A stretch of DNA of 64,000 bases, taken from assembly GCF_001194135.2 (NCBI RefSeq), contig NC_068995.1, positions 32,889,974 through 32,953,973 of the forward strand, given 5' to 3'. The translations under genes were made by a program, and so were the position numbers. The notes beneath the pieces were generated by a model that saw nothing but the letters and a program-made list of their open reading frames with translations, made no database searches and had not been told where the DNA came from. Origin of the DNA: Octopus bimaculoides. Taxonomy: Eukaryota. Shown here piece after piece: positions 29,565 to 61,700 of this stretch. Each line of letters begins with the position of its first letter. Within the stretch, counting starts at the first letter, position 1.

Positions 29565-29708
29565 GAAAGTCAGACAGCTTCTAGAAGATGGTATTGATCC
29601 CAATGCGCTGTTCCATGATGATGATATTGCTCCAATTCATTTGGGCCCTGGAATTAATAAATCCATCACACATTTACTGCTTGAATATGGTGGCAACCCT
29701 AACCTCAG
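29565..29708 (+). CDS. ANKLE1: ANKLE1 coding exon A (ankyrin): KVRQLLEDGIDPNALFHDDDIAPIHLGPGINKSITHLLLEYGGNPNL
   Basis: Acceptor ttttattttttcag| at 29564 and donor ctcag|gtattt at 29709. 144 nt, phase 2 to phase 2, with ankyrin LLxxGxDPN / LLLEYGGNPN motifs. Confidence 0.9.
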
Positions 29709-41100: not shown

Positions 41101-44100
41101 AAGGTGCCATGCTGTGAAACTGAACTCAGAACCATGTGGTTGGAAAGCAAGTGTCTTACCACAGCCATTCCTGCAAGTATGTGGGACATTTTATATTGGA
41201 ATGGTTTGTTTTCTATATTAAAGTGTTTGTGTGTGAGAGAGAGCGAGCGAGTGAGTGGTGTGTGTTCCAAACTTATCTATAAGATATTTTGTGATAACTT
41301 GAGACTGATTTTATACTGTTTTTCTTTTTCACTCCAGGACTCAGGAAGGAGTTACTCCATTACATATTGCTGCTACCTGGGGGAACACAGACACACTTAA
41401 ACTACTGTTAAAGAATGGTGGAGATATAACTTTACGTGATGTTGTAAGTTTTTTTTTTTACGTAAGGTTTTGTTTACTGGTTTGCTCTTACCATTCACTT
41501 TTACATTGCTGATGAAATTTTTTTAATGACATTTTTCCTTTTCCTCCATTATTTAAAGTCAGAGAGGAGTGGAAGAAGTTGAGGGAGTTGTTACCTTTGT
41601 TGACAACACAGGAAGAACAGATTGCTTAACCCTTCAGCATTTAAACCAACCATATCTGGCCCAAATATTCTTCCCGTTTTATGCTCAAACTGGCCAGATT
41701 TGGCCTCTTACACTGTCCCTACAATGCCATTAATAGTGACTAACTAATTAGTTCTATAGTCATTTCAGTAGAGCGGTGTCCTTACAGCCATAGATAAATC
41801 TGTGGCTCAAAACTGAGCTAATACTCTGATCTTCTTAACGTAGATGAACATTTTGGAATTTTCTTTCTTATTTATAGTAGGCAATTACTCAATAGAAATA
41901 AAGTCTTTACAAAATATATAATTAGCAACAAAGACAATATTAATACTGAGATGTAATATTTATCCCCACTTGAACATAGAGATTCTGTTAGAACAAACTA
42001 TATTGCAGTTGCACTTTGGTGCATTTTGCACCAGAAGCCAATATGAGAGTTTGTCTCAAGGTATATATCGCAGTATAGTTTGTTCTAACAGAACATCCAT
42101 GTTTAAGTGAGGATAAAGGCTTTATAGCCTCTGTGTTTAAGGGAAGGTGCATGGCCAAGTGGTTAGGGTGTTGCGTTCATGATTGCAAGATCATAGTTTC
42201 AATTCCCAGACTGGGCAGTGCATTGTGTTTTTGAACAAAACACTTCAATTCACATTGCTCCCGTTCACTCAGCTGTAAATGAGTAGCCCTGCAATGAACT
42301 GGTATGCTATTCAGGGGGAATGTTTGTGATCTTGACCACTTACACACCATGGAAACTGGGTAACCAGCAGTATGAGACCTGGAGCTTCAAATAGTGCTCA
42401 CTCACTTTATATCTGTACTTATGTATCCTTTTTTTTTTTTTTGAGTTTACACAGAAACAGGGCTCTTTATTCATATATTTGCAAGTAATATGTTCATGGT
42501 TAAAAATTCTATAAACCAAATTCAGTTATTCAAACAGTATTACTGATCTCAACTTTAGAGTAGTTACACCATTTCCATATTGTAAAAGGCAACTAAAAAG
42601 ATTGACAATAAGAAGGCCATCGGATCAAAACACACTACCTCAGAAAAGATATTCAACTGATATCAACATAAAAAAGTAGATAATGCTGATAATACTAGTA
42701 CACTTGTTAGTTTAAATATCTAATACTCTGATATCATCATCACTTTAATGTCCATCTTTCCATGCTGACATGGGTTGGATGGAGTTTATTGAGGCAGATT
42801 TCTATTGCTGGGTCCCTTTCTTGTCACCAACCCTCACCTATTTCCAAATAAGGTAATACTCTCCATGGCCAGACATGTTTCCATGGAAGATTGAGAACAG
42901 AGGACACCACTTGCATGATGGTGACATGCATTTACAACCTTCACAGGTTTTGTCAATGCAAAGAACACTAATGCACATACATACACACATAATATATATG
43001 CCTACATATGCAATGGGCTTCTTTCAGTTTCCATCTACTAAATCCACTTGCAAGGCTTTGGTCAGCCTGGGGCTATAGACACTTGCCCAAGGTGCCATGT
43101 AATGAGACTGAACCTGAGACCATGTCATTGGGGACCAAGCTTCTTACCATACAGCCATGCCTGCACCTACAGATTATTTATTTATTTCTGTTGAATGTTA
43201 TATCAAACGGTTTATTTTTATTTGACTTATAATAATTGCCAGTTTTAACATTTAGAAGAAATTATGACGCATATGCCTTAGCTATGTTTGATGTTTAATT
43301 GAAAAAGTTTCAATATCAAGAATTTTATCTCTTATTTTCATTTTCACATTCTAGGATGGAAACACAGCTTTGGATATGGCTCAGAATTATGCACATGAAG
43401 ATTGTATCAAAATCTTGCAAAGACATTCCCAGAAGTTGAAATCCAAGTTAGATGCTCACATGAGACAATTAAAACGAAGCCGTTCACTAAGTAAGTAAAT
43501 GTCTTCTTTAGCTCTTTAGCATTTAAGCTGGCCATATCCAGCCCAAGTATTTTACCTGTTTTATGCTTGAACTGGCTAGATCCAGCTTCTAGCACATCCT
43601 ACAATGTCATTTTGGACACTGGGCCTCACTAAGGAAATGACAAGGGACCTGAAGATGTGGCGATTTTCTGTACTTGATAAGACGTATCAGGCTCAGTAAA
43701 ATTGCTGCCTTCCACACATACAGGCTTGTCCTTTCAGGTGCCGGTGCCACATACAAAGCACCAGTGCCAGTGCTGTGTAGTGGTTGGTATTAGGAAGGGC
43801 ATCCAGCCATAGAAACCATGCCACAACAGACAACTGGAGTCTGGACAGTTCCCAGCTGGTCAACTCCATGGTAAATGTGTCCAACCCATGCCAACATTGA
43901 AAACAGACATTAAACAATGATGATGATGACATCATCAAATCTTGAATCTGTGACATAATGCATGATTAATTCAAAACATTGTGAATAAATAGGCATTTGA
44001 CAGAGTAATCTAAATGCTAAAGAGATAAAATTGACTGGATATCTGTGATTCAGTTATTGATTGACTAGAATCTGGCCTCTAGACTGGTTCAAGATATGCA

Positions 44101-44838
44101 AGTTGAATTGCTGTGTAGCTTTAGACGAGCCACATTTTTCTGTTACTCTTTTAGTGGTTTCAGTCATTAAACTGCACCCATACTACAACATCACCTTCAA
44201 GGATTTTTAGTCACTCATATAGAGCCTGGTACTTGTTTCATTTCTGTACTTGATTTCTTTGTATCTATTAAATTGTTTCGTCTTGTTTTGATGTGTTTTT
44301 ATGTTGCACCAGTACAAGTGAGGTCACTATGCTACTTGCAAGACTCAAGATCCTCTTCAACCTAGTAGGTTTCAGTAGAGTAGGAGTCGGTTTTATGGTA
44401 GGAGATGAATGGGTGGATGGTGGCAGTGGTGGTGGTGGTGTGTGTGTGGGGGGTTAGGTGTGAGATAACGGACCAGAACAGAATGGGTTTGTTGCAGAAC
44501 AGAATGGGTTTGTTGTAGAAGAGTTACACAGTTACTCACATTACAGAAGAGAGGGTAGGAGTTGCTGGGTTGGAGCTGGAAGGAGATACAAATACTGGCG
44601 ATGGGGTGTCAGAGTGGACCCTCAAGGTATGGAGTGAGTTGAAGTGAGTGGGGACAGGAGAAAAGGGTGATTGAGTGGGTAGAGGTTGCAGTAGTTTATG
44701 GGGAGAGTGAGGGATGGTTAGAGATGTGGAATGAACATGTGTTGAAGGATGATCTGTAGGGAGAAGTAGATGAACTCACATGTAGAATATGGCAGTGATA
44801 GAGTGAACATGTGAGAAAGAAAAAAACCCATAGCAATA

Positions 44839-44875
<37 letters not shown>

Positions 44876-45269
44876 TACAGGCATGGCCATGCGGTAAGAA
44901 GCTTGCTTCCCAACCACATGATTATGGATTCAGTTCCACTGCATGGCACCTTGGGCAAGTGTCTTCTACTTTAGCCTAAAGCCCACCAAAGTCTTGTGAA
45001 TGGATTTGGTAGACAAACGGAATGAAACCCACTGTATTTATATATGTATGTGTGTGTGTTTTTGTGCCTGTATTTGTCCCCCCATCACTGCTTGACAACT
45101 GGTGTGTTTATGTCCCTGTAACTTAGTAGTCTGGCAAAAAAAGGCCGATAAAATAAGTACTAGGCTTAAAAAATAAATCCTGGAGTCAACTTGTTTGACT
45201 AAATCCCTTTGAGGCAGTGCTCCAGCATGGCCTGTCAGATGACTGAAACAAGTAAAGAAATGAAAGAGA

Positions 45270-45305
<36 letters not shown>

Positions 45306-45688
45306 CGTCGTGGCACTCTGTTGGTTATGATAACGAAGGTTCCAGTTGATCCAATCAACGGAACAGCCGGCTCATGAAATTAACAGGCAAGTGGCTGAGC
45401 ACTCCACAGACATGTGTACCTGTAACATAGTTCTCAGGGAGATTCAGAGTGACACAGAGTTTGACAAAGCTGGCCCTTTGGAATACAGGTACAACAGAAA
45501 CAGGAAGAAAGAGTGAGAGAAAGTTGTGGTGAAAGAGTACAGCAGGGTTCACCATCACCCTCTGCCGGAGCCTTGTGGGGCTTTAGGTATTTTTGCTCAA
45601 TAAACACTCACGATGCTCAGTCTAGCAATCGAAACCGCGATCCTATGACCACGAGTCCACTGCCCTAACCACTGGGCCATTGCATCTC

Positions 45689-45719
<31 letters not shown>

Positions 45720-48700
45720 TATATATGAGAGAGAGAGAGAGAGAAAACTGGGAAAGAAAGGGAGACAAGAAATCTTCAATGAAGAGCAAAACTTTCTCCA
45801 ATATGTGTGTGTGTTTGTATGTGACATCTTCATCATTATCGTTTTGTCTACTTTGCATGCACCCGACCCACTCTGTGAAGTGTGAAGTTGTGGGAAAGGG
45901 CTACTGAATGAAAACTAACACCTCAATAGAGAAAATCATCATCCATCTCATGAAAACATTGGTAGAGATTAAGTGAATGAACCAACATGCATAACATAAA
46001 TGTATATATGTCTACCTAGCTATCAATTTGTAAAGGTCTGAGTGTTTATGTCTTTGTATTTATACTTTATCTAACTACTAATCTATAGATAGACCCACCC
46101 CCACCCCTTAAACAAACAAATATTTTTATAAAAGGAAAAATAAGCACAGATAAATCAACTGAATAAGAACATTGGAAAATTGCAAGCAGGGAGACAACTC
46201 TTCCTCTCATGTGTTGTTGACTGAGAGTCGTAGTTTCAGTAACGTGTGTGTGTGAATGCGAAGACATACATTGTGGACTCTCTAAATTGTAGACGATAGA
46301 TGAGGGTTCTGCAGATTTTTGCTGAGCAATCTTTCACAGATAATTCGTTTTTTAGCTTACTCCTTCCATCAAATCAATATTGCTTGTACAGTTGCATTTT
46401 GTGCCACATATTAGATGTTGAAGTGATGGCAGAGCAATGTAATGTAATGTGAAGTGTTTTACTCAAGAACACAATGCATCACCCAGTCCAGGAATCGAGA
46501 CTAAGATCTAACAATCATGAATGCAACACTCTAACCACTAGGCCATGTGCCCTCACTTTGTATGTAGACATACACATATGGTAATATACATATATTAATC
46601 TGTACATATATATACATATATTTATATTAACCTAATTGGGCTTTGTAATTGTGGAAACTGTGACACTGGTAATAGATCATAATTAGCAAGTGACAATGGT
46701 GGTGATTAAGAATCTGTTTCATGCAGCAACTAGTCAGTAAATTCATCTGTGTACTTAGCAATGACACTCGACAGTCCTATGCTGTTCCTTTGACTTTTAC
46801 ATATTTTAATCAAGTATGTCATTCAGCCAAATTTCTTCATAATTTTCACAAATACATTTACTTTCATTTCAATTATCCCTACTAAATACTGATCATCCAA
46901 ATGAATAACTTATTGATAATATGTAAAATCATCAATTATATTTCTTTGTAATAAACAATTTATTATTTTGTTTTTTAGATGAGAAGACAAAACCCACATC
47001 CTCAAGATATGTGCACCAAATGCCATCTGAGAGCTTCAATGCCAGCCAATATGTAACTGCTGATAGTGATCCTGAAGAATATGAATCTCTGGAAATGTCA
47101 AAGTCTAAACCTTCATTTTCCATCCTCAAAAGGACTCAGAATGGTCTGGTTCATCATAGTAAAGACAAACAGTTTGACATGAGGAAATCTGTTTCAACAG
47201 AATCTTATGAGGAGAAATACATCAGCAAAAACACTGGATATCAATCCTCTAACCGACCGATACCTGCTCTTCGTAGGCGCACTGGCAACATTGCAAATCT
47301 GCCAGAGAAATTTAAGGATACTGAGATTAAAAGTAAGAAAGAATCAGAAGTTAGTTCTGAAATGTTTCTGACTCCTGCAGCCTCAAGCCCACGGAGACAT
47401 CGTCATCGACCAAGTCGGCGTTATCATTCTGATGATGATTCTCCAAATGTTAGCTCTTTGGAGCAGATTTCTAGTAGTGAGGAAGAATTCATTAGTTCAA
47501 CTAATACTACAACAGATTCCGATCTATATATTACTGTTAATGAAACACCACAGAAACCAGTATTTCCACGTATTGATCCAGATTTGTCCATTGACTTACA
47601 AAAAAAAATGGAAAAATTGCAATCATTGAAAATTCCAATTGCTCATAAAATTGAACAGCTTCGTAATTGCCTGAACAAACTGGAAAACAATCAGTTATCA
47701 GCTTCTCTGGAACAGATTCTTCATGAAAGTCTTATAAATGAAAGCAAGCCCATTAGTGTACCCATTGTTCGAGAAAGTTATCCTCCAACTCACAGCCGTT
47801 TATGGAATGGTCGACATAGAGAAGGCAGAACACAGCCTACACATTCAGTCCATAAAAAATCAAGTCCAAATAATGTTGATATAAAACTAAGCATGGATAT
47901 TCCTTCAGGAAAGATTTACGTGAATGAAAGGAACATCAAGAAATCAAAACATCGTGGTCACCAAACATATGAAATTCACCTGGATTCCAGTGAATCAACA
48001 GAGAAAAGCAGTAACAGATCAAAAGATGATTCAGTTATTGATATTAAACTGAAACCAAAAAAGAAATCCCACAAGAAAATTTATGTCGTGAATCCACCTC
48101 ATGGCTCAGAGTTTCCTACAAAATATGAAAAGTTTGAATATTTAAACAGTGAGTACAATGATAAAAGTAAATTAGTATGTAATGAACCATCTTATAAAGG
48201 ACCATACCCTAACGTAACAGAAAACAACCACAACAGAAATAATCCCAAGTTTTATAATCATGCTGCTGGTCACACTGAATATTTGTCCCAACAAACCAAT
48301 CAGAATGGCTGGGGTAGAGGACAGTATATTGATGAGAGGTGTGATAGAATAGTAGCAAATACAACTAGTTCTGTGTATCAAAAAATACCGAGAAGTAATG
48401 CTGAAAAAACCTCCTGTAATAAAGAAAAACAGCGGCAAGAGCCAAGCAGAATGAGAGAAAGTGGTCATCCTTCTGGCCATTTATATCCCAAACTGACCAC
48501 ATTAACAGATAATGATGATGAGTCTTGTGAAAATCGAAATGATGTGCGGTGTGTTCAAATACCATCAAGGTTGCAACATCAACAACAAAATGCGCATTTA
48601 AGAACAGTTTCTGGAAGAGATCATCTTGACGGTGCAATAGAAGAGACTATTGTAAAGCAAGTATTTCGACCACCCTGCTCTAAATCACAGGCTGTTCTAT

Positions 48701-51700
48701 CTAAAAGAACTCAAGAGTTCAGAAAACCAGATTCACAGGTTCTTACTCATGCAGAAGTTCACCAAGAGGAAGAACCATCTCGAAATAAAATTTCAACCAG
48801 GAACAAAAATTTTCGGTTTGGGGGGCGTGTCATACAGAAGCCATGTCACAAAGATATTGCAGCTAAAACAACAGTGCCCATGGTGATGAACACGCCCCTT
48901 AATCCTCAAATTGCTCGTTGTAAGTTATATGAGACTGAAAGTGCAGTGCAAAATATGGATGTTAAACGGACTGAGTCAGATGTGAGTTGTGCTACTACAG
49001 ATACCTATGTTACATGTAGAACAATAGGCAGTGAAAATAGTGAAGAGTTCTTTTCTTGTGATGATGGAACCAATGAAAGTGCTCTTGAAAGTAAATTTGA
49101 AAGTATTCTACATTCTTTCAGTAGCTATCTGAAAAAACAACTTGAACAATCTAATAGTCAAGAATCCAGCAATTTTCAAGATTTTCAATTCAATACTGAT
49201 GAATTATCAAAAGCCATGTTAGAGCTGAATCTGAAAGAAGGAAATGATTCTTCCATTGATGCAGAAGCATATATGAGTATGTTGTCACGAATTGAAGATC
49301 AGATAATTACTGAGCCACAACGGAATGGTCAAGAATCAATTTCTCTCTATACAAGCCATTTTAAGAGTGTAAATACACCTGAAAACTCGTGCTACATAAG
49401 TACAAGTGAACAATGCCAACCAGTAAACTCACAACAGGTAGTTCATCGTCAGTCAGTGTCACCTGAATTGAAATGTTATGAACCAAAAGAGAGTAAATAT
49501 AACAGTGCTCTGTTGCCTCGGGAAAGTGATGAAGATTCTCTCTACCTTGTTTGCAATCCAAATAATTCCAGTGCTGCTCAGTTTCAATCATTTGATGAAC
49601 CCGACTGTAAACATTTAGTGCCAAAACCTCCAAAACTACTTCCTAAATTACAGCAGAAGAAATATTCAGCAAATAGAGATAGAGATTCTAATGAGACTGA
49701 AAAGACAAGGGGTTCTCATTCATCACAATTTTCACAAGTAATGTCTGAACTGCAGGGTAAATTCCAACAGAAAGCAGCACAGCCAAACACATCTGTTTAT
49801 CGGTGGCAACCACCAGACTATATTCTGAAATCTAAACCCAGCTGTTCTGCTAACAAAGCAGTTGGAAGTACCATTAGCTCAAGTGCTCATCAAGAAAATC
49901 TTAAAAGAAATGTTGGTTTAGAATTGAAAAATCACCCCCTTGTCAAAAAATTTAATCGGTTAGATGATGGTGAACTTTCATTAAGTTGTGTTGAAAACTC
50001 ATGTCATTTTTATTCATGTGAAACTTCGGGTAATGCTAATTGTAGTAACATAGTCAGTGAACCCATTGTTACTAAGTCTAATGATGTGCCACCTAAGATT
50101 GAGAGAACCGCTTCTCGGTCACACTTTGTGTCATTTGAAGAGAAAAAAAAACTTCATTGTAAACCAAGTCGCAAGCAAGAAAGACTTGTTGATCTTCACT
50201 CTTACTATACATCAGTCCAAGAAGAAGATGGACTTGATTACTCTCGTTATGTATCAGTTCAAGAAGAAGAAGAAGAAGAAGAAGAAGTTGATTCTCGTTA
50301 TGTGTCTGTCCAAGGTGAAGCTAAACCTGCTGATTCTCAATATTTATCTTTTCAAGAAGATGAAATTCCTAATTCTCGCTATTTATCAGTTCAAGGGGAA
50401 AACCAACCATTTACTTCTCAGTCTCATTATTTGTCTGCAAGGGAGGAAACAGAAGCCTCGTCATCCAAACATCATTCCATGTTAACTCAAAATCAAAATA
50501 AGTCGGTCAATTCCCAGTCACATTTCCTCTCAGCTCAGGAAGATGGTCTTGGTATTTCAAAAATAAACCATATACAGCAGAGAAGAAAGAGAATTCCTCA
50601 AAACAGCCACTCTGGGTGTAAACAGCAGTCTGCTCCTCAAAATGAACCAGTTACATTACAAACCCGATTCACATCACCAACAGATAATTGTGGGGATCAG
50701 TCACATTATGAATCTGTTCAAGGTGGAATGATGTCAATAGAAGGGCAATATTTTTCAACTGTGCAAGATTCTTCTTATAGTTTAAAAGATCAAAATCTGG
50801 ACCAATCTACTGTCCTTGATAAATCTGCTATAAACTCTCAATGGCAATATGTCTCTGCCAGTAGTGGCTTTCATAATCGCTCTGTTACCTGGCAGAATCC
50901 AATCTCTACATATGATGAACCTGATGCAGTTGTTGTTGTGAGTACTGATGATAGTCTTTCATGGAGTCCTGGAAAAGATGGTCATCCACCCCAAATTCCT
51001 CCTTTTACATCCACATCGGCTTCAGAAGATGTTACTTCTGGGTCTACCTCCTCTGATGGTCTTAAAAAATGTCTTGCATCTAAAGAGTTTCTATCTCCTG
51101 AAAAGAGAACAACTATGTGGGTTAATGGACTCTACAAGATTGAGGAATATTTTGACCAAAACATAAGTAGCATAAATCCAGTTACTTCTCAGAGCAGTTC
51201 TTCTGATAATGTAAACAACATGAAAAAAATTGCTGCTAATGCAAATAGGCCACAACCGTCAGCACCACCTAAGTCAGAGGTGTTTAGTGAGTTTACAACA
51301 GCCCATAGTGACTTTAATGCCATTACAGATATTTCTACTGTTGCTGTTGCTGGAACTACTGGTGATAAAAGTGATCCTTTGACTCCATCATCTCGAAGTC
51401 CTCAACGTCCTACTTTGTATCCATCCCTTCATGATCCTCTTCCTAATCCTGCTTCAAGTCCCACGCCAGAAGGTAAGGAACCAATGATTAAAAATAGATT
51501 GGCCAATGATGCTTCTATTCATGTGTCTTCTGATGAAAGGCAAAAAGATAATGATGGGTCATCAGCAAACTTAATTAATAATGTTAATGATAATGACCAG
51601 ATTGGTTTTGTAAGAAATAAGACAGCAATGTGTGCAATTAATGTCCTTCCATCAGTTAGTTCAAAAGGATTAGAACAGGAATTGCCAAATATTAAACAGG

Positions 51701-54700
51701 AACTAGTGAATTTTAAAGCTAATAAAAATATTTCTACTCAGACACCTATTCTAAGGATCCCACCTAGCCCTCCAACTAAAAAAGCTAATTCACACTTGCC
51801 TAAACCCCCAAACCACCTTAAGAATTCTTCTAACATAACTATTACTAGTTATACCAATGATTCTAAATCACCAAAGCGTTTTGAAAAATTACGAAAGACA
51901 ATCGTTAATTTAAAAAAATTGCTTCCCAGTGGAAAATCTCAGAGAAAAACTGGAAAAAGCACATTTATCAGTGTTGATAGAAGTCCTAAGTTTTTTTCTT
52001 CAAATCCTGGCCGATCAGTTGCAAAGACTGGTACTTCAGGAACACAAACTGATACACCAATTTATTATGAACCCACTCTCCAACCAGTACATGTTACTAA
52101 GTCTGATGAACTCTCTCTCTCTGTAAATTTTTCAGAGCACCTGTCTGATTACTCTGAGAAATACCCTGGTTCCATTATAGATCACCTTAAACAGCCAAAT
52201 CTTTCTGAGACCTTGGACATTTGTAGTTCTTCTGGAGCAACTTCAGGTTCTATAGAAAGATTCTTGACTCCATATCAAGAAGAAAATGAGCAAGCACCTG
52301 TTGGTTTTGATGAAGTTGACTTCATGCCAACTCTTTCACAGGCAAATAAGATCATTGCTACTGTACATTATGGAGAAACATATCGGAGCTGTATCAAATT
52401 GCCAGATAAACATGACAAAGATATTAAATTCATACACATAGACCCTGAAAGACACATCAATTTTATTGAGCGTCGCATTTCTGTTGAACCTGAAAGTAGC
52501 CATTCAGAGGACTCTGTGGATGCTAAAAAATATTTCTCAAAATCACCTGAGGAAACTTCTAGTGAAAGCAGTGATGAGTTATTCTGGAAGTCGTATAGCA
52601 AAGCCAAAAAGGATAAAACCCTCACAGATTCAAAACTTTTACAGCTACAAAGTGTCCTCAAGAGCCATAGTTCTTTTACAGATGATGGTCTGAAGAAAAT
52701 ATTTGTAGATTTTGATTTGCCACTTCCAGGTCCAATCACTTCAGCTACTCGGGGAATGTACATCAATCGCCTGAAGGCTATTGCAAATGGAACTCCATCT
52801 CCTAAGGTTTTACCCTCCCCAGGTAAGGTGTCTCTAGAGACATTCAACCATCTAACTTGTCCATTTTGTCTTTTTCTTTGCCCCCTTCTGGCTGTTCACA
52901 CATTATGAAGATGAAACAGTTTTCATCTGCTTCTTCATAAAATCCTTGTCTTTCAATAATGATTTTGTAAGGCAAAATAAGATCATCCCAATGTTTAGGC
53001 AAGTGATATTACATCACATTCAGTTTCTACTCTATGTTACTCCATATTATCTTTTCATTAAATTAGTTACTTTGCTAAATGAATCATGGATTAAATCATC
53101 TATTTTGGTGTGGATAATGTTTAGCTTAGTTTGGTACTTTTTACACATCAAACTCTTCCCATAGGTTTATATTATGTGCCCCCCCCCCCAAATGTTTTAA
53201 CATTTAGAATAGCTAATAACTAAACTTTCAACCACACACACTTTGAAATTTTACTGAGCTTATTATTCTAGCAAAATATCACTGTATCAATTTGCTCTGT
53301 TGTATTAGAGATTATGCAAGAAAAATTTGGTGTAATTCTTGTGTGATAGTTTATTCATATTTGTTTTACAAGCAAAAGGAATTAAATGCTGAAGGTACTC
53401 ATGTAATTATACTACTATTTAAATAACATATTATACAAGTTTAATTCTCATATTTGTTTAACATGTCTCAGTACTTTGAAAAATTATAAAAATGCTGCTC
53501 TTTAAGATGTTAGCTCTCTCACCCTCTCCAAGAAAAATCAACCCAAAACTTTAATTAATTAATTTCTTTTCTACATTGAATAATGATTTTTGTTTGTAGT
53601 ATATTTTTTTTCACTCTGGAGAGAAGGTAGTCCCTATTACAGGCCTCTGACTTGCTATTTTCGGAAAGCCTAAAAGTTCTTGAAAAAACTTTAAAATTAT
53701 ATCTATGTTCAAAGGTACAGGAATGACTGGCTAAGATTTCTTTTCAAGCACACTGTACATGTGTGTGTGTGCGTGTGTATATATAAAGGAAACTATTCAG
53801 TTTTCTGTTGTTCTCTGAGTGGTTGGCGTTAGGAAGGGCATCCAGCTGTAGAAACTCTGCCAAATTAGATTGGAGCCTGGTGTTGCCATCCGGTTTCACC
53901 AGTCCTCAGTCAAATCGTCCAACCCATGCTAGCATGGAAAGCGGACGTTAAACGATGATGATGATGATGATGATGATGATGTGTATGTGAATATATATAT
54001 ATATATATTCCTCCACATTAGGTAGGGTATCGAGCAGTAGAAACCAACCCAAATCAGATTGGAATCTGGTGCAGTTCTCTGGCTTGCCAGATCTGAACAG
54101 ACATTAAAAGATGGCGATCATATNNNNNNNNNNNNNNNNNNNNNNTATATATATATATATATATATGATCGCCATCTTTTAATGTCTGTTCAGATCTGGC
54201 AATCCAGAGAACTGCACCAGATTCCAATCTGATTTGGGTTGGTTTCTACTGCTCGGTGCCCTACCTAATGTGGAGGAATATATATATATATATATATATA
54301 TATTCACATACACATATACAACAGAAAACTGAATAGTTTCCTTTGACCAAATTCCATTCACAGTATAAGGTGCTTCCCCCGTATTCTACTCAATGAGAAT
54401 GAGCCAGAAAACATGATTGCAAAATGGACTTCTTATCCCTACAGCCTGTGACTATGAACATGCATATAATTTTATAAATTTGTTAAAAGCATGTAGTGTT
54501 TCTTAAAATAGCAAGTCTTGTAGTTTGAGTTACAGTAATACATTCAATGGTGATTTTGTAATAGAAAGTCCAGGCATATCATAAAGTAGTTCTGCATATA
54601 TAATTCTTTATTATTACCTATAATGCCCATCTTTGATCTTTTATTGCCAGATTATCCTGTCACTCTGCGTCAAGCTATGAGGGAGCTACCCAACTGGACA

Positions 54701-55735
54701 GAAACTGTTGAGATGGAGCAGAAGATGGTTGTGAAGTTTGAAAATTCCAAATATAGTCAGAAACGCAAAGGTGGAAATTTGAAGCATTTTTTCACATATC
54801 TGCTTCTGGACCCTCGAGTAACCAAGAATCTCCCACTTCAAGCATCTAAAATTGGTGAGCTATGTTAATGTGGAATTCCTACTGTATAAGGAAGGAAGTT
54901 CTGAAAGTTTAGTTGCTAGAATAAGAATAGAATGGAGGGAGTTCAAGTAGTTATTACTTTTCTTGGTAACAAGAGGTTTCTCACTCAGAGTGAAAGGTCA
55001 ATTGAATGATGCTTGTGTATGAACAGCAATGCTACATGGGAGTGAGACATGGGCCTCAAATGCAGAGGACATGTGAAAACTAGAAAGAGTGAAGCTAGTA
55101 TTCTGCATTGAATGCACAACACCAGTATGCATGTTGTGTCTATGACGAAATGCAAATATGTTGAGTAAAATTAGGTATAAGAGGAATCAGATGTAGTATA
55201 CAACAGAGAAGAGTGTGCTAGTTTGGTCATGTGATGTGTATGGATGTGGATATCTGTATGAAGAAGTGCCGATTACTTTAAAGTGGATGGAACTTGTGGA
55301 CAAGAGAGAACCAGGAAAACATGGATGAAGTAATGAAGGTTGATCTTAAGATGTTAAGCTTCGTGGAGGAGATAACAAAGGACTGAGATGATTGGTGATT
55401 TACTGTGCTTGAGAATGCCAACTACAGTTGGTGTGAAGTTGGCTGATGAAGAACTACATTACACATGGTATCCAGCCATGTACAACTACTTCTTCCTCTC
55501 TGAGCAAGTTGGCTTGCTGGGTTGGTCTGCAGTTTCCTAGCCGCTGACTTGACTGTTAGATCTGTGTTGGTGTCAGGGGGCCATGTTTTGCAACATAAGC
55601 ATTACAGAGTAATCTGAATGCTAAGGGATTAAGACTGTTTCCTTCACCTATACTTCCATTCTTCACTTCCACCTCTTGAATCAACAATTATCCTCCCCTA
55701 CCACTATATGTCTCACACACACCTCATGTACTATG

Positions 55736-55775
<40 letters not shown>

Positions 55776-58700
55776 TGTTTATCGTTTCATCATTGCTATT
55801 CTGATGTTCAGCACTGTCAGTCATCTCCTACCCCACTTCTCCATTGCTAGATTTACTCGATCACTCCAACCCTCACTTCTAAAATGTGAGTAGGCATGTA
55901 GCTTTTCTACAGAAATAAACCTGTTCTGCTCTTGCCCCTCCTCTCATAATTTTACTCATCCTTGGCCCTTTATCTCCTAGCATAAAGTTGCTCCCCTTCA
56001 GGTTTGTTGTTTTGCAAACTGCATGATGGCTTCACTGTTCCTACTCAATACATACTATAAAATGGTTGGTGTTTGGAAGAGCATGCAGCTGTAGTAGCCA
56101 TCCCAGACACTGAAGCATGATACAGTTCCTGAGCCAATCAGATTTTGTTAACCCACCCAACTTATATCAGCATGGAATATAAATGTTAAATGATGATGAT
56201 GTTAATAATGACATAAATGTGTGTTTGTGTGTAAATGTGTGTGTGTTTGTGTGTAAAAGTGTATGTGGGTATTGCATGTTTATGTCTCCTTACTTTGGCA
56301 TTTGTATGACTGTTATAAACGAGTGTTACTGTCATGCAAGCAATGTCATTTCATTTTCAGTATTCTATGACAACATAGCTCGCCATAGGAAAAAAAGTTA
56401 CCTTGCTTCAAAGCAGGTGAGGGTTGGTAACAGGAAGTGCGTCAAGCTGTAGAAAATCTACCTTAATAAACTCTGTCCAATTCATGCAAGCATGGAAAAG
56501 TAAACACTAAATGACGATGATGATGATGATATAATTTTCCTTTCCAACACTGATTAATTATTAGGTGAAATATTTTTTGTGAATGACAGACTGAGAGGAG
56601 GAGGAGGGTGCATCAGTTTTTTGTGGTCATCATCATCATCAGCGTTTAACGTCCGCTTTCCATGCTAGCATGGGTTGGACGATTTGACTGAGGACTGGTG
56701 AACCAGATGGCTACACCAGGCTCCAATCTGATTTGGCAGAGTTTCTACAGCTGGATGCCCTTCCTAACGCCAACCACTCCGAGAGTGTAGTAGGTGCTTT
56801 TATGTGCCACTGGCACGAAGGCGAGTCACACGGTACTGGCAATGGCCACGCTCAAAATGGTGTACTTTACGTGCCACCTGCACAGGAGCCAGTCCAGCGG
56901 CACTGGCAACGATCTCGCTCGAATGTCTTACACGTGCCACCGGCACAAGTGCCAGGAAGGCGACGCTGGGCACAGGTGCCATCACGATTTCGCTTTCGCT
57001 TGCCTCAACAGGTCTTCGCAAGCCGAGTTTCATGTCCAATGAAGGAGATAACATTGACATGCCTGAATCAGATGATCTTTCTCAATTTTGGACATAGTGC
57101 TGATTATGGCAGACTTGAAAGTTTGTATGATGTAATGGGGTTGTTGATTGACCTTTCTCTCAAATGTGCCCCAGTGGATTGAGGTCTGGTGAGCTGGGAG
57201 AACATGATCATGGAGATTGGTACATATCCACACTTGGGTTGTTCTAGCCTTATGAGATGGCAGGGTCTTGTTAGAAGATGTACAGCCCTTTGTTGCGTAC
57301 TTTGTCTATCCAGGGCATCACAACTTTCTCCAATACTTCTCTGTAAACAGTGGCATTGATTGTTAAGCTCTGTGACAAAAGTGAGGAGGCATGACATTTC
57401 CCTTGTTACTGACGACTTCCAGAACCATTGAAGTTGCTGAGAACTTAGTATGTATGACAGTTGGAATCTCATTTGTGTCTCTGCATAACCATCTGTCATT
57501 CCTTAAGGTTTACATTTTGGTTCTGATCAGTTTTTTTTTCATTGGAGAAAAGCCAAAGCATTCTAGCCTTTTAGTGTTTTAACTTGTTTAGGAAACACCT
57601 TGCATGGATTGAATGATTTTTTTCTCTTGACATAAACTGGCCCCTCTGTATCACTTATGGCTTGTACTTGATGTCCTTGTGCACAACTCATTTGATGGTA
57701 CATTCTGAAACCTTGAGATCTTTTGCAATGGCTCCGATTGACCTTACGGGGATTTTATCAATTATTTCTTGGGACTTTTTGTATGAAGTTCAGTGTTCTG
57801 ATGGTATTAGGACCCTGTATGTGCATTTTGTGTTTAGCAGCTTCCATCTCCTTTTGAACTTTGCTAATGAAGGATTGTGTAACTTTCAGGAAGCTAGCTA
57901 TCTCTGTAACACTATGCTACAGTGATTACAGTGTGCTTTTTCACTTGCTGAGTCAACCTGATGTCTGACATTATTTATCTGAAAAGTATGGTAAAAAAAA
58001 TAAGTTAGAAGGAAGTTAGAGTTCTTGAAACTGACACACCCTGTAAACTTGCTTGTTTATTTTTTATTTTAATTTTATTTTTTTTGTTTTCAGGAGATAA
58101 ATCTGAACTGTTCCGTAACTTTGTACATGCCATATTCTATGTTGGCAAAGGTACACGTGATCGTCCTTACAGTCACTTGTATGATGCTATGAAACGTCTC
58201 AACAGCAAGGAAACTAAGGTAAGCTACTCTCTCTCCTTCCTATAGCATTGCTTTCTTATATTGGAACTAAGCAGGAGAAGAAGGGAAATGAAATGTTGCT
58301 GTGTCTGCCCATGTCTTGGTAGTATATTCAGCTGAATCAATGACCCCATATTGCTGCTAATTTATTGACTACACAGAATATAGCCAACCTCAGTTGAGAT
58401 TTGAAATTAGAGTTGGGAGAGCCAGAACTAAATACTGTAGAGTACCTCAGTTCATTGTTCTACTTTTCTTTGCTGTCTTTGACATCTCTTGACTTCCTCT
58501 AATAAAATATAATGAAATAATAATTTCAAGCAACAGAAATGGAGGGATTTGTTTGATTTCCTTTATCACACTGAACCACACTTGCAATTATAATTTCATG
58601 TATCTCATCCGTTCATCCAATCCTTTTCAGCAGAAGGAACAGCATTTACACATCTGCTGTGGAGGATGGGTCTTCTTGAGTGCAGCAAGATGCCTCCATA

Positions 58701-61700
58701 CATAATTATTACCTCCGCCAAGGAAGGAGGTTATGTTTTTGCTGGTGTTGGTTTGGGAAATTGGTTGATTTTCAGCATGCGTGTAAAAGGGTGGAAATGA
58801 CATGCTTGGGAGAGGTCTGCACTCTCCAAGTGTTTTTCTAGTTGAATTAGGTTTTCCCCTCCCATCTCAAAAGATTTGGTTTTTACCACATTTTTGTTCA
58901 GAACTGGAGTACTTGTTACATTAAGATGAAATGTTTTATGTTTAGTTCTATTTTTGTTTTTTTTTTNNNNNNNNNNNNNNNNNNNNNNNNNNNNNNNNNN
59001 NNNNNNNNNNNNNNNNNNNNNNNNNNNNNNNNNNNNNNNNNNNNNNNNNNNNNNNNNNNNNNNNNNNNNNNNNNNNNNNNNNNNNNNNNNNNNNNNNNNN
59101 NNNNNNNNNNNNNNNNNNNNNNNNNNNNNNNNNNNNNNNNNNNNNNNNNNNNNNNNNNNNNNNNNNNNNNNNNNNNNNNNNNNNNNNNNNNNNNNNNNNN
59201 NNNNNNNNNNNNNNNNNNNNNNNNNNNNNNNNNNNNNNNNNNNNNNNNNNNNNNNNNNNNNNNNNNNNNNNNNNNNNNNNNNNNNNNNNNNNNNNNNNNN
59301 NNNNNNNNNNNNNNNNNNNNNNNNNNNNNNNNNNNNNNNNNNNNNNNNNNNNNNNNNNNNNNNNNNNNNNNNNNNNNNNNNNNNNNNNNNNNNNNNNNNN
59401 NNNNNNNNNNNNNNNNNNNNNNNNNNNNNNNNNNNNNNNNNNNNNNNNNNNNNNNNNNNNNNNNNNNNNNNNNNNNNNNNNNNNNNNNNNNNNNNNNNNN
59501 NNNNNNNNNNNNNNNNNNNNNNNNNNNNNNNNNNNNNNNNNNNNNNNNNNNNNNNNNNNNNNNNNNNNNNNNNNNNNNNNNNNNNNNNNNNNNNNNNNNN
59601 NNNNNNNNNNNNNNNNNNNNNNNNNNNNNNNNNNNNNNNNNNNNNNNNNNNNNNNNTATAGAACTACATTCAGCGTATGTCTAAGCTATTGTGTTTAGAC
59701 CTGGTTTCTATCCTCAAACTGTTCAGTTTTGTAGATGCAATTTTTTTTTTTATAAAGCACTCCAAAATTAGAAAAATCAAAAATCTGCAACAATCTCGGT
59801 ACCATGAGTATCGGATAATGGATTTTCAACAGTGTAAAGAAACTGATTGTGGTGATCATAGTTTTGACGGTGATTGTGGTGAAAGCAGAGACAGTGTTGA
59901 TGATGACGATGATCGAGATAAGTATGGGAGGAGGTTATGTTTTTGCTGGTGTTGGTTTGGGAAATTGGTTGATTTTCAGCATGCGTGTAAAAGGGTGGAA
60001 ATGACATGCTTGGGAGAGGTCTGCACTCTCCAAGTGTTTTTCTAGTTGAATTAGGTTTTCCCCTCCCATCTCAAAAGATTTGGTTTTTACCACATTTTTG
60101 TTCAGAACTGGAGTACTTGTTACATTAAGATGAAATGTTTTATGTTTAGTTCTATTTTTGTTTTTTTTTTCAGAATGATGAAAAGTTATCACACATTATT
60201 GACATTTGGAATGATGAACGAGGAGTGATATCCCTCCATTGTTTTCAAGGAGTTACTTCTGAGGAAGCACACTCTAGAGAAGCTTGCATTTTAGATGTTA
60301 TTGGTAATGCTAAACACCATTATTTATATATTTATTTATATTTTCTTTTCTGATCTGAACAGATCAAGAATGCTGCATAATTGCTGGGTAGAATAGTACA
60401 ATTCTAACTAATTTATTTGAAATAGAAGAGGGTTTAGGGAGCAAGGGTTGTGCTAGATTGATGCTGACTGGGTCACCTTGGCAGTTATTTGAAATTCTTA
60501 TGAGATTGGAAACTAGGATGGTTGGAGTAAGACAGCAGATGAATTATGATTGGATATTCTGTGTGTATGTTAAAGATATGGGAAGCTGCCTGGTGCAGAT
60601 AGTAGCACAAGTCATGAAACAAGAATGATGATGTAAGTAGAAGTGAGCTGAAATAGATTGAAGTGCATGGTGGAAGAGTGAACCATAAGCCTTTAGAATT
60701 TAAACTGGCTGTATTTGGCTCAAATAGTCTACCTGTTTAGGTTCAAACTGGCCAGCTCCAGCCTCTCACACCAACCTTACAATGTCATTTTAAAAATAAA
60801 CAAACTTCAAAACAACTTCAAAATCTTAAAGATAATACAGATTAATTTTTAAAAATATGGATAACATTTGATAAATTAACTTGAATACCAAAAAGTTAAC
60901 ACAGAACCACTCTTAGGAAAGAAACTGGAATACAGTGTAGCCTGATGAGCAAAAATGGGTTTCAAACAGAGGAGGAGAAATTTAAACTTCAGAATGGCAA
61001 TAATGAACATCTTGTATGTTAGAAGGTTGGGACTAATGTCTGAATCCCTAGAGATGTTTACATATAGGAGGGATGATTATTTAGTAGTTAGAATTTCATT
61101 CTTTGTTTGGTGTGCTTTTATGAAAATGAAAAGTGAGTGCTTGGTGGAGGGAGAGAAGAAAAATTAAGTATCATGGGTTATATAGTTAACCTCTATGCCA
61201 ACTTCCATCAGTAAACTATTTAGAAGTTAGTGGTTCTTTGCTCACTACTAGAGAACCTGTGTTTGCTGAAGAAGGGCACCATCAAGCTTCTGTATTATTT
61301 GATGTGTGTTGATGTTGAGAAAAATTTTTTTTCTCTAATATTCCTTAAGAATCAGTGACAATACACAAAGGAAAAAATCAAATAGAATACAGTGTCAAGA
61401 TTTTCCCTCAATTTAGGTATCTGGTCTAAAAGCTTGTAACAGAGGGAACTTTGTAATGATATACAAAAGTTAAGAGTTGATGTGTATGTGTGTGCATACA
61501 GATATGCATGTGGGTATCCAAATTAACAGAATGCATTATGTTTATTGTAGCATAGGCACTCAAAAGGTTGTCTTGCTGTACTTTCTTACTGTTGAGCAGC
61601 CAAATTCTATGAGAAAGTGAGCTGACGGTAAAAAGGAAAAAAAAAAGCCAGGATAAAAAGGGGTTAGATTTGAAAGTGGTGCAATCTTGAAAATGTTTAG

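What the first reader, a model, noticed from the sequence alone, without database searches (positions are those of the whole stretch)
46979..52822. ANKLE1 with a 5.8-kb single exon: predicted protein over 2280 aa
Seen: an uninterrupted 5844-nt coding exon free of the transposons and long microsatellites that fill the flanking introns, inserting about 1900 aa of S/E/Q/N/K-rich sequence between the ankyrin repeats and the LEM motif. Established: human ANKLE1 is about 615 aa and C. elegans LEM-3 about 700 aa. Inference: a roughly threefold or greater expansion, with the frame maintained by selection, could turn a bridge-resolving nuclease into a long disordered scaffold. I cannot tell whether this expansion is already described.
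Basis: partly seen in the sequence, partly recalled or inferred. Interest (0 to 1): 0.7.

Follow-up and report, generated by a model that had tools for sequence, protein, structure and literature searches.

The report
Octopus ANKLE1 with giant linker exon
The 5.8-kb open exon is real and encodes a long, mostly disordered linker in the octopus version of the DNA-bridge-cutting nuclease ANKLE1, but it is already in RefSeq, and long linkers in this protein are common across animals, with cephalopods at the top of the range.

Summary
Window 46979-52822 (+) is one 5,844-nt exon with no stop codon, bounded by AG|..|GT. It is exon 5 of Octopus bimaculoides LOC106880612. RefSeq isoform X1 (XP_052829194.1, 2,306 aa) contains its translation exactly.

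The protein is an ANKLE1/LEM-3 orthologue: ankyrin repeats, a linker of about 1,890 aa, LEM, then a GIY-YIG nuclease with all catalytic residues.

The exon is maintained by selection. The frame and both splice sites are kept in four octopods. dN/dS is 0.25-0.38 overall and below 0.6 in every 150-codon window. All 48 indel runs against Argonauta are in frame. A more distant cephalopod has spliced 2,555-2,571-aa transcripts and the same single giant exon.

AlphaFold2 and composition predict disorder apart from LEM and a few helices. One 120-aa island is as constrained as the nuclease domain.

The "threefold expansion" uses an unrepresentative baseline. ANKLE1 is 714-1,701 aa in other molluscs, about 1,300-1,540 aa in sharks, amphibians and reptiles, and 2,001 aa in amphioxus. 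A snail already has a 717-codon linker exon.

A conserved internal donor (51472|51473) gives a predicted isoform that lacks 450 aa, including LEM. No paper in the searched library describes any of this. Interest is modest.

The parts
29565..29708 (+). ANKLE1 coding exon 2 (X1 aa 21-68, ankyrin repeats). Exon 1 (MAHVHGDQKLKDAIEKQNE) lies upstream, outside the window.
   Evidence: The exon set reproduces XP_052829194.1 exactly. tblastn. The exon 1 peptide is absent from all six frames.
41338..41443 (+). Coding exon 3 (ankyrin repeats)
   Evidence: Pfam Ank/Ank_2 over X1 53-128
43355..43490 (+). Coding exon 4 (end of the ankyrin region and start of the linker); donor TAA|GTAAGT
46979..52822 (+). 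Giant coding exon 5: 5,844 nt, phase 1/1, X1 aa 149/150-2096. It encodes about 1,890 aa of linker plus the LEM domain.
47578..47736 (+). Predicted long helix, possibly coiled-coil-like (X1 349-401). It is the best-predicted element in the first half of the linker.
   Evidence: AF2 pLDDT 53-75, helices at exon aa 200-235 and 241-252. Identity is 50% to the distant cephalopod over X1 361-390.
50125..50850 (+). Array of a short repeated motif, roughly S-x-[YF]-[VIL]-S-[VATF]-x-[EG]-E, for example DSRYVSVQEE and SQSHFLSAQED
   Evidence: 14 matches in X1 against 1.1 +/- 1.1 in 500 shuffles (largest 5), clustered at X1 1198-1439. The distant cephalopod has 16 matches at the homologous place.
50809..51168 (+). 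Conserved island I1 (X1 1426-1545): ...WQYVS..NRSVTWQNPISTYDE..STDDSLSWSP..TSTSASE..EKRTTMWVNGLYKIEEYFD...
   Evidence: Identity is 53-70% to the distant cephalopod and 73-100% to Argonauta in 30-aa windows. dN/dS is 0.05, against 0.07 for the GIY-YIG core. AF2 pLDDT is below 50, so it is likely a cluster of binding motifs rather than a fold. No homologue was detected outside cephalopods.
51466..51480 (+). Internal alternative 5' splice site GAAG|GTAAGG (exon would end at 51472), in the same phase as the terminal donor
   Evidence: It is used in RefSeq isoform X3 (XP_052829196.1, 1,856 aa), UniProt A0A0L8FXC9, A0A0L8FY13 and the O. vulgaris model. AGGTAAG occurs only twice in the exon, here and at the terminal donor. 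21 nt including synonymous sites are identical in four octopods.
52115..52138 (+). Internal 3' splice site ...ctctctgtaaatttttcag|AG (intron would end at 52135). With the internal donor it defines a 663-nt in-frame 'exitron', 51473-52135.
   Evidence: It is used only in the older model A0A0L8FY13. The sequence is conserved in four octopods.
52024..52248 (+). Conserved island I2 (X1 1831-1905): PIYYEPT..KSDELSLSVNFSEHLSDYSEKYP..SSSGATSGS
   Evidence: Identity is 50-70% to the distant cephalopod. dS is low, 0.33.
52351..52608 (+). Pre-LEM element (X1 about 1940-2025: YGETYRSCIKL..IKFIHIDPERHINFIERR..). It is the only part of the linker with detectable homologues in non-cephalopod ANKLE1.
   Evidence: A cephalopod profile hits Pinctada, Mytilus, Sinanodonta, Patella, Argopecten and Gigantopelta ANKLE1 at E 5e-7 to 4e-4, just upstream of their LEM. 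Predicted helix.
52678..52776 (+). LEM domain core (X1 2049-2081, ..PGPITSATRGMYINRLK)
   Evidence: Pfam LEM scores 17 bits, E 0.004, below the 24-bit cutoff. The orthologous position in P0281 scores 38 bits. PGP.T..TR..Y is invariant in the alignment. AF2 pLDDT is 70-84, helical.
54651..54854 (+). Coding exon 6 (DYPVTLRQ..: region between LEM and GIY-YIG, and start of the GIY-YIG domain with FTYLLLDP)
58094..58218 (+). Coding exon 7 (GIY-YIG: FYVGKGTRDRPYSH)
   Evidence: Pfam PF22945 over X1 2144-2302, E 1.6e-60
60174..60303 (+). Coding exon 8 (GIY-YIG: ..SREACILDVIGLANLTN..)
62341..62513 (+). Coding exon 9 with stop codon (C-terminal end of the nuclease domain, ..FLAEGERQIFPIDLDYKS*)

Best explanation
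The feature is coding exon 5 of the Octopus bimaculoides orthologue of ANKLE1/LEM-3. This is the GIY-YIG endonuclease that, in worms and human cells, cuts leftover DNA or chromatin bridges at the midbody.

The domain order is the family's usual one: N-terminal ankyrin repeats, linker, LEM, GIY-YIG. In cephalopods the linker exon has grown in frame from an ancestral mollusc exon of roughly 0.7-1.5 thousand codons to 1,950-2,200 codons. That ancestral range is inferred from living molluscs.

The nuclease end is intact and presumably active (inferred from conserved catalytic residues). The linker is translated and kept by purifying selection (shown by sequence evolution, and by spliced transcripts in a related cephalopod). 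It is mostly intrinsically disordered (predicted).

It is not featureless. It contains a few helices, an array of a short S-x-Y-[VIL]-S-x-x-E motif, and islands conserved as strongly as the catalytic domain. These most likely serve as docking or phosphorylation sites that control where and when the nuclease acts. That role is inferred by analogy with the same, shorter, unstructured region of LEM-3, which carries the Aurora B sites needed for midbody targeting.

In octopods, a conserved in-phase internal donor is predicted to give a second isoform that keeps about 1,500 aa of linker and the nuclease but drops LEM.
For: **Identity.** The window encodes A0A0L8FY13_OCTBM at 100% identity, and its exons reproduce XP_052829194.1 aa 21-2306 exactly. 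Pfam gives Ank_2 at 4.5e-14 and LEM-3_GIY-YIG at 1.6e-60. The equivalents of human Y453, Y486, R492, H498, K519, E551 and N565 are all conserved (residue list from PMC10287932). The best hits of the C-terminus are all ANKLE1.

**Selection.**
- The exon frame and both splice sites are kept in O. bimaculoides, O. sinensis, a third Octopus species (Logan genomic contig) and Argonauta hians. In-frame lengths are 5,817-5,901 nt.
- Pairwise dN/dS is 0.25-0.38, and every 150-codon window is below 0.6.
- Against Argonauta: linker 0.27, least conserved stretch 0.42, ankyrin repeats 0.07, GIY-YIG core 0.07, island I1 0.05.
- There are 48 indel runs against Argonauta, all in frame.

**Expression as one piece.** A 7,811-nt Logan contig (SRR6517992) from a more distant cephalopod encodes 2,555 aa, ankyrin repeats through GIY-YIG, colinear with window exons 2-9. 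The homologue of the giant exon is continuous in it. Its cluster holds 2,571-aa spliced forms on at least 21 contigs. It also holds genomic contigs in which the same region is one open exon that reads into an intron at the same ..SSP|G boundary.

**Disorder.** AF2 mean pLDDT is 32.8 and 34.1 for the two halves. The LEM domain, serving as an internal positive control, reaches 70-84. Composition falls on the disordered side of the Uversky plot. Pfam, NCBIfam and PDB sequence searches find nothing in the linker.

**Ancestral architecture.** Physella acuta ANKLE1 shares the flanking exon boundaries (aa 68 and 102) and has one 717-codon linker exon.

**Role of the homologous region in LEM-3.** It is described as unstructured and carries the AIR-2 (Aurora B) sites S194/S196 needed for midbody localisation (PMC11975286).

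**Alternative isoform.**
Against: - There is no direct transcript or peptide evidence from O. bimaculoides itself. The RefSeq isoforms are predictions whose read support I could not inspect.
- The species behind SRR6517992 could not be identified.
- The AF2 runs used only five sequences, so low pLDDT may partly reflect a shallow alignment.
- dS against Argonauta is about 1 and near saturation.
- The length statistics rest on predicted proteins from many annotation pipelines, and only on the best 150 of 986 HMMER hits.
- Any specific function of the linker (docking, regulation) is inferred, not shown.
Confidence: 0.85

Rival explanations
1. The giant open frame is largely an annotation illusion. 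In mature mRNAs, internal introns ('exitrons') remove most of the exon, and the real protein is of ordinary ANKLE1 size.
For: Three gene-model sets splice inside the exon at 51472|51473: RefSeq X3, the 2015 UniProt models and O. vulgaris. The internal donor and acceptor have good consensus and are conserved at the nucleotide level. Synonymous divergence is reduced in the last quarter of the exon.
Against: The predicted events remove only 221 or 450 of the 1,947 codons. AGGTAAG occurs nowhere else in the exon. The whole length, including the removable part, keeps its frame with dN/dS below 0.6 and only in-frame indels over the Octopus-Argonauta divergence. Full-length spliced transcripts exist in another cephalopod.
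Confidence: 0.05
2. The linker is a functionally inert spacer. It is disordered sequence that grew by drift and is tolerated as long as the frame stays open so that the C-terminal nuclease is made. It has no sequence-specific role.
For: There is no detectable homology outside cephalopods for X1 150-1940. The composition is polar and low in complexity. The linker evolves faster than the domains. Linker length varies widely across animals, as expected if length is weakly constrained.
Against: Selection for an open frame alone would give dN/dS near 1, whereas it is 0.27 overall and 0.42 in the least conserved 200 aa. Island I1 has dN/dS 0.05 and 53-70% identity to a distant cephalopod, equal to the catalytic domain. 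The motif array is about 13-fold over shuffles and is shared between lineages.
Confidence: 0.12
3. The model is a chimera. The big exon belongs to, or was captured from, a different gene or a transposon and is wrongly joined to ANKLE1.
For: Most of the exon has no Pfam, PDB or NCBIfam match and no homologue outside cephalopods.
Against: The LEM domain and the pre-LEM element, which is shared with other mollusc ANKLE1 proteins, lie in the same exon. Physella has the same exon layout with a shorter linker exon. Spliced transcripts join ankyrin repeats, linker and GIY-YIG. No interspersed repeat of the window occurs in the exon.
Confidence: 0.02

Closest known systems
Human ANKLE1 (Q8NAG6, 615 aa) and C. 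elegans LEM-3 (704 aa)
   Same: The domain order is the same: ankyrin repeats, unstructured linker, LEM or LEM-like, then a C-terminal GIY-YIG nuclease. All catalytic residues are identical (PMC10287932). The linker is the region that carries regulatory sites in LEM-3 (PMC11975286).
   Different: The octopus linker is about 1,890 aa, against a few hundred. Nearly all of it has no detectable similarity to these proteins. Octopus LEM scores below Pfam's cutoff. A LEM-less isoform is predicted.
Long-linker ANKLE1 orthologues already in databases: Branchiostoma belcheri XP_019619571.1 (2,001 aa), Gigantopelta aegis XP_041373213.1 (1,701 aa), skate, shark, newt, alligator and squamate ANKLE1 (about 1,300-1,540 aa)
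   Same: They have the same family and domain order, and very long spacing between ankyrin repeats and GIY-YIG: 1,000-1,679 aa.
   Different: Their linkers are not detectably homologous to the cephalopod one, apart from the pre-LEM element in molluscs. The cephalopod proteins (2,298-2,571 aa) are the longest found.
Physella acuta ANKLE1 (XP, LOC131954254, 1,024 aa)
   Same: The gene architecture is the same: small ankyrin-repeat exons with boundaries at aa 68 and 102, one large linker-plus-LEM exon, then four small nuclease exons.
   Different: The linker exon is 717 codons against 1,948. Physella lacks the intron that corresponds to octopus intron 4.
SLX4-SLX1 (functional analogy only)
   Same: A GIY-YIG structure-selective nuclease is coupled to a LEM/SAP-type DNA-binding helix pair and a very long, mostly disordered platform. 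PMC11975286 points out the structural parallel between LEM-3 (LEM-like + GIY-YIG) and SLX1-SLX4 (SAP + CCD).
   Different: In SLX4-SLX1 the platform is a separate polypeptide with defined partner-binding modules. No sequence similarity to SLX4 was found or tested here, and no partner of the octopus linker is known.

Membership tests
ANKLE1 / LEM-3 | N-terminal ankyrin repeats | tested here: met
   Pfam Ank_2 4.5e-14, Ank 3.6e-12 and Ank_5 2e-11 over X1 53-128. They are encoded by window exons 2-4.
ANKLE1 / LEM-3 | C-terminal LEM-3-type GIY-YIG nuclease domain | tested here: met
   PF22945 LEM-3_GIY-YIG, 203.9 bits, E 1.6e-60, X1 2144-2302, covering profile positions 2-149 of 151.
ANKLE1 / LEM-3 | Catalytic residues of the GIY-YIG centre (human Y453, Y486, R492, H498, K519, E551, N565) | tested here: met
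   All are invariant in an alignment of octopus, Argonauta, a distant cephalopod, Mytilus, Gigantopelta, amphioxus, skate, newt, alligator and snake. The residue list comes from PMC10287932.
ANKLE1 / LEM-3 | LEM (or LEM-like) helix pair immediately upstream of the nuclease domain | tested here: met
   Pfam LEM alone is sub-threshold in O. bimaculoides (17 bits against a cutoff of 24). However, the orthologous segment of P0281 scores 38 bits, PGP.T..TR..Y is invariant across phyla, and AF2 models it as helices with pLDDT 70-84.
ANKLE1 / LEM-3 | Orthology rather than domain shuffling (same domain order, shared gene structure) | tested here: met
   The order is ankyrin repeats, linker, LEM, GIY-YIG. 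Exon boundaries are shared with Physella ANKLE1. All named best hits of the C-terminus are ANKLE1.
ANKLE1 / LEM-3 | Cleaves branched or stressed DNA and localises to the midbody | not testable with these tools
   This needs biochemistry and cell biology. It is only inferred here from the conserved active site.

The most novel reading that the evidence does not exclude
The cephalopod linker may be more than a long tether. It may be a lineage-specific interaction platform built into the nuclease, an 'SLX4 in cis'. The 120-aa island I1 is as constrained as the active site, and the conserved S-x-Y-[VIL]-S-x-x-E motif array would recruit partners. Octopods would then switch LEM-mediated chromatin, BAF or DNA binding on and off through the conserved internal 5' splice site at 51472|51473. 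The reduced synonymous divergence in that part of the exon would reflect splicing or RNA-level regulation.
Probability: 0.2. Interest if true: 0.5.

Novelty: new member of a known kind. Interest (0 to 1): 0.25.

Why it matters
For ANKLE1 biology, the useful point goes beyond octopus. The ankyrin-to-LEM linker, which is treated as a short unstructured region in the two studied species, ranges from about 200 to about 2,200 residues across animals. Mammals, birds and nematodes are at the short end.

Cephalopods are the extreme case. They also show that parts of such a linker can be as constrained as the active site. That marks these parts as candidate regulatory or docking modules for a nuclease whose targeting is still poorly understood.

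The predicted LEM-skipping isoform offers a natural test of what LEM contributes.

For genome annotation, the octopus RefSeq entries named 'uncharacterized protein' can be named ANKLE1. None of this overturns current understanding.

Tried and rejected
1. **Orthologue lengths from the word-indexed search.** I queried search for homologous proteins with the 279-aa C-terminus. Every hit was 489 aa or shorter and the octopus proteins themselves were missing. The tool appears to keep only candidates within about 1.75x the query length, so this list is biased and I did not use it for lengths. I used the exhaustive HMMER search instead. That search also did not list the octopus cluster itself.

2. 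**Linker homologues outside cephalopods.** A single-sequence phmmer search found nothing at E < 1. Profiles built from four cephalopods found only the pre-LEM element. Pfam, NCBIfam and PDB sequence searches on the whole exon returned nothing beyond a weak LEM hit.

3. **Logan contig L001 as transcript evidence.** It is genomic, because it aligns through both intron flanks. I used it only for evolutionary rates.

4. **Species behind SRR6517992 and SRR11869394.** No paper in the library cites either accession.

5. **Literature.** No paper holds ANKLE1 together with 'cephalopod', and a broader search brought up none linking ANKLE1 to octopus, squid, mollusc or the two LOC identifiers.

6. **First AF2 submission.** I fixed this by starting that row at the called Met.

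7. **Fold search.** I did not run it, because the models are below pLDDT 50 almost everywhere and any matches would be meaningless.

8. **A guessed DNA pattern for the intronic repeat** matched nothing. I replaced it with a blastn self-comparison.

Full report

Yes, exactly as described. The window has a single very long open frame, 46927-52905 (+), of 1,993 codons. Read against the sequence, the exon starts after ttttttag| at 46979 and ends before |gtaagg at 52822. It is 5,844 nt, phase 1 at both ends. The clean frame 46981-52821 gives 1,947 residues without a stop.

At the window's base composition the chance of 1,993 stop-free codons is about 1e-61. The next longest N-free open frame in all six frames of the 64 kb is 175 codons. 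The other five frames of the exon contain 74-269 stops. GC falls from 46% at codon position 1 to 25% at position 3.

The exon holds one short microsatellite, (AAG)9, which encodes a Glu run. It holds no copy of the SINE-like repeat that occurs at least 10 times in the surrounding introns.

**2. What gene is it?**

The translation is 100% identical to UniProt A0A0L8FY13_OCTBM, so the window is from Octopus bimaculoides. The 90%-identity cluster contains RefSeq LOC106880612 isoforms X1 (XP_052829194.1, 2,306 aa), X2 (2,288 aa) and X3 (1,856 aa), and O. sinensis LOC115220343 X1 (2,298 aa). Isoform X1 contains the whole exon translation exactly, at aa 150-2096.

Eight exons in the window reproduce X1 residues 21-2306 letter for letter:
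- 29565-29708
- 41338-41443
- 43355-43490
- 46979-52822
- 54651-54854
- 58094-58218
- 60174-60303
- 62341-62510, followed by the stop codon

Exon 1 lies upstream of the window.

Pfam finds ankyrin repeats at X1 53-128 and LEM-3_GIY-YIG at X1 2144-2302 (E 1.6e-60). It finds a sub-threshold LEM at X1 2049-2081. The LEM assignment is backed in three ways. The orthologous segment of a related cephalopod scores 38 bits. The PGP.T..TR..Y signature is invariant across phyla. AF2 gives the segment pLDDT 70-84.

All residues shown by mutagenesis to matter in human ANKLE1 are invariant: Y453, Y486, H498, K519, E551, N565, and also R492 (residue list from PMC10287932). This is an ANKLE1/LEM-3 orthologue with an intact nuclease centre.

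**3. Is the exon really coding along its whole length?**

*Conservation of the frame.* I obtained the orthologous DNA from three sources: O. sinensis (L003), Argonauta hians (L002), and a third Octopus species on a Logan genomic contig (L001, 89% nucleotide identity, aligning through both intron flanks). In all four species the AG acceptor, the CAG|GTAAG donor and the frame are kept. In-frame lengths are 5,841, 5,817, 5,820 and 5,901 nt.

*Substitution rates.* Pairwise dN/dS is 0.25-0.38, and every 150-codon window is below 0.6. The values against Argonauta are:

| Region | dN/dS |
|---|---|
| Ankyrin repeats | 0.07 |
| GIY-YIG core | 0.07 |
| Linker overall | 0.27 |
| Least conserved 200 aa of the linker | 0.42 |
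| Island I1 (X1 1426-1545) | 0.05 |

There are 48 indel runs between O. bimaculoides and Argonauta, all in frame.

*Transcripts in a related cephalopod.* The third protein search found P0281, a 2,555-aa protein on a 7,811-nt Logan contig from run SRR6517992. It runs from the ankyrin repeats to GIY-YIG. It is colinear with window exons 2-9, and the homologue of the giant exon (aa 164-2348) is continuous in it.

Its cluster holds 2,571-aa versions on at least 21 contigs. It also holds 10-kb contigs in which the same region is one open frame that reads into an intron at the same ..SSP|G boundary. That species therefore has both the single giant exon and the spliced mRNA.

Its ankyrin and GIY-YIG domains are only 50-77% identical to octopus in 30-aa windows, against 60-93% for Argonauta. 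It is therefore a more distant cephalopod. I could not identify the species.

**4. What is the linker like?**

The composition is typical of disordered sequence: S 14.4%, and rich in K, E, N, P and Q. It falls on the disordered side of the charge-hydropathy boundary.

AF2 was run on two overlapping halves, each with a five-sequence cephalopod alignment. Mean pLDDT was 34.1 and 32.8, and 931 of 1,051 and 872 of 933 residues were below 50. The LEM domain served as an internal positive control and reached 70-84. Moderately confident helices are predicted at exon aa 200-252, 699-776 and 914-933. Short helices are predicted at 1358-1366, 1633-1646 and 1822-1833. The shallow alignment is a caveat.

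Pfam, NCBIfam and PDB sequence searches find nothing in the linker.

Conservation is uneven. Island I1 (X1 1426-1545) and island I2 (X1 1831-1905) are 50-70% identical to the distant cephalopod, as high as the catalytic domain.

A short motif, roughly S-x-[YF]-[VIL]-S-[VATF]-x-[EG]-E, occurs 14 times against 1.1 +/- 1.1 in shuffled sequence. It is clustered at X1 1198-1439. The distant cephalopod has 16 copies at the homologous place.

Profiles of the cephalopod linker find no homologue in 273 other ANKLE1-type proteins, with one exception. That is the 85-aa element just before LEM, which matches other molluscs at E 5e-7 to 4e-4.

**5. How unusual is the length?**

An exhaustive HMMER search with the LEM + GIY-YIG region found 986 proteins. 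Of the best 150, 120 have both ankyrin repeats and GIY-YIG. Their spacing from ankyrin end to GIY-YIG start has a median of 523 aa, an interquartile range of 358-850, a 90th percentile of 1,052 and a maximum of 1,679. Octopus is about 1,948.

Named examples:

| Group | Species and protein length (aa) |
|---|---|
| Non-cephalopod molluscs | Saccostrea 714, Solemya 780, Mytilus 803, Pinctada 841, Patella 893/1,209, Argopecten 925, Plakobranchus 976, Physella 1,024, Sinanodonta 1,029, Candidula 1,257, Batillaria 1,316, Gigantopelta 1,701 |
| Hemichordates | 1,024-1,135 |
| Amphioxus | 2,001 |
| Skates | 1,506-1,530 |
| Shark | 1,516 |
| Bichir | 1,435 |
| Newt and axolotl | 1,330-1,541 |
| Gecko, anole, snake | 1,326-1,502 |
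| Alligator | 1,438-1,497 |
| Ostrich | 677 |

Human is 615 aa and worm LEM-3 is 704 aa (PMC10287932, PMC11975286). Those two are at the short end.

The cephalopod proteins (2,298-2,571 aa) are the longest found. They are the tail of a continuum: about 2.4x a typical mollusc and 1.35x the longest non-cephalopod mollusc.

The gene architecture is also old. Physella ANKLE1 has the same small ankyrin-repeat exons and one 717-codon exon for linker plus LEM. The octopus exon is thus an ancestral exon that grew in frame, not an insertion of a new exon.

**6. Internal splicing.**

Several gene models splice at GAAG|GTAAGG (51472|51473):
- RefSeq X3 (1,856 aa), UniProt A0A0L8FXC9 and the O. vulgaris model (1,845 aa) join it to exon 6. 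This drops 450 aa, including LEM.
- The older A0A0L8FY13 joins it to an internal acceptor at 52135|52136, removing 221 codons.

The donor is in the same phase as the terminal donor. AGGTAAG occurs only at these two places in the exon. Twenty-one nucleotides around it, including synonymous sites, are identical in all four octopods.

Four-fold degenerate sites diverge about half as fast, or less, in the last quarter of the exon (exon aa 1416-1947) as in the rest. For example, O. bimaculoides against O. sinensis gives 0.022 against 0.076 (p = 0.004). Orthologous intron segments differ by about 0.05-0.08. The boundary for this comparison was chosen after seeing the window profile, so the result is suggestive only.

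This supports a real alternative 5' splice site. It does not support removal of most of the exon, because all predicted isoforms keep at least 1,497 of its codons.

**7. Most likely mechanism.**

*Shown.* This is an intact ANKLE1 orthologue. Its linker exon is translated in a related species and is under purifying selection throughout.

*Inferred.* The C-terminal LEM + GIY-YIG unit does what it does in worm and human: it binds and cuts branched or stressed DNA. The expanded, mostly disordered linker carries the regulatory and docking information. In LEM-3 the corresponding unstructured region holds the Aurora B sites needed for midbody targeting, and the N-terminal part restricts protein level (PMC11975286). 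The conserved islands and the motif array are the candidates for such sites. The internal donor would give a LEM-less isoform.

*Not shown.* Any partner, any localisation, or any effect of linker length.

**8. Novelty.**

The protein models are public, but most are not named ANKLE1. No paper in the searchable library mentions ANKLE1 together with cephalopods. I rate the finding as a new, extreme member of a known kind, of modest interest.

The more general observation may be worth more than the octopus case: ANKLE1 linkers vary tenfold in length, and the model-organism proteins are the short ones.

Noticed in passing
window 51224-52822 (last quarter of the giant exon): Four-fold degenerate sites diverge about half as fast here as in the first three quarters, or less. 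This holds in all five species pairs tested (for example 0.022 against 0.076 for O. bimaculoides against O. sinensis, p 0.003-0.02), and the rate is below that of orthologous introns (about 0.05-0.08). It may reflect splicing signals of the alternative region, RNA structure or RNA editing. The boundary was chosen post hoc.
   Followed up: partly
window 50125-50850; L004 (P0396 aa about 1395-1666): An array of a short motif S-x-[YF]-[VIL]-S-[VATF]-x-[EG]-E occurs 14 times against about 1 expected. A more distant cephalopod has it as ..HSCY[IV]S[TA]..E.. units. The serine followed by x-x-E fits a CK2-type site next to an aromatic-hydrophobic pair. No partner is known.
   Followed up: partly
other taxa (proteins P0144, P0149, P0161, P0152, P0163, P0153, P0188, P0191, P0150, against P0145 and human): ANKLE1 is about 1,300-1,540 aa in skates, a shark, bichir, salamanders, squamates and alligator, but 677 aa in ostrich and 615 aa in human. 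This suggests that the linker shrank in birds and mammals rather than growing elsewhere.
   Followed up: no
window 43491-46978 (intron 4) against L005: In Physella the large linker exon starts at aa 102, directly after the exon that corresponds to octopus exon 3. Octopus and Argonauta have an extra small exon (43355-43490) and intron before the giant exon. This is either an intron gain in cephalopods or a loss in the snail.
   Followed up: no
window 14-298, 10659-10794, 23292-23534, 40870-41024, 43738-43929, 53812-53970, 56627-56939 and others: A SINE-like interspersed repeat of about 150-300 bp (73-96% identity between copies, both orientations) is scattered through the introns and the upstream region. 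Its copies produce spurious open frames such as GLVKPDGNTRLQSDLAEFLQLDALPN.
   Followed up: partly
window 16560-16943 (-) and 35365-35832 (-): Transposon remnants lie in intron 1. One is a mariner-type transposase fragment (Pfam Transposase_1, E 1.9e-7). The other is a weak reverse-transcriptase zinc-binding fragment (zf-RVT, E 5.5e-4, below cutoff).
   Followed up: partly
window, about 5.5 kb, 23.5-24.4 kb, 28.8 kb, 40.1-40.6 kb, 58.9-59.7 kb, 62.7-62.9 kb: There are 2,327 N bases in several assembly gaps, all in introns or upstream sequence and none in a coding exon. They create long artificial 'open frames' in ORF lists.
   Followed up: no
tool behaviour: the search for homologous proteins returned only proteins within about 1.75x of the query length. 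The octopus cluster itself was absent from the 279-aa query results and from the exhaustive representative search. Length distributions taken from the word-indexed search would be biased.
   Followed up: yes
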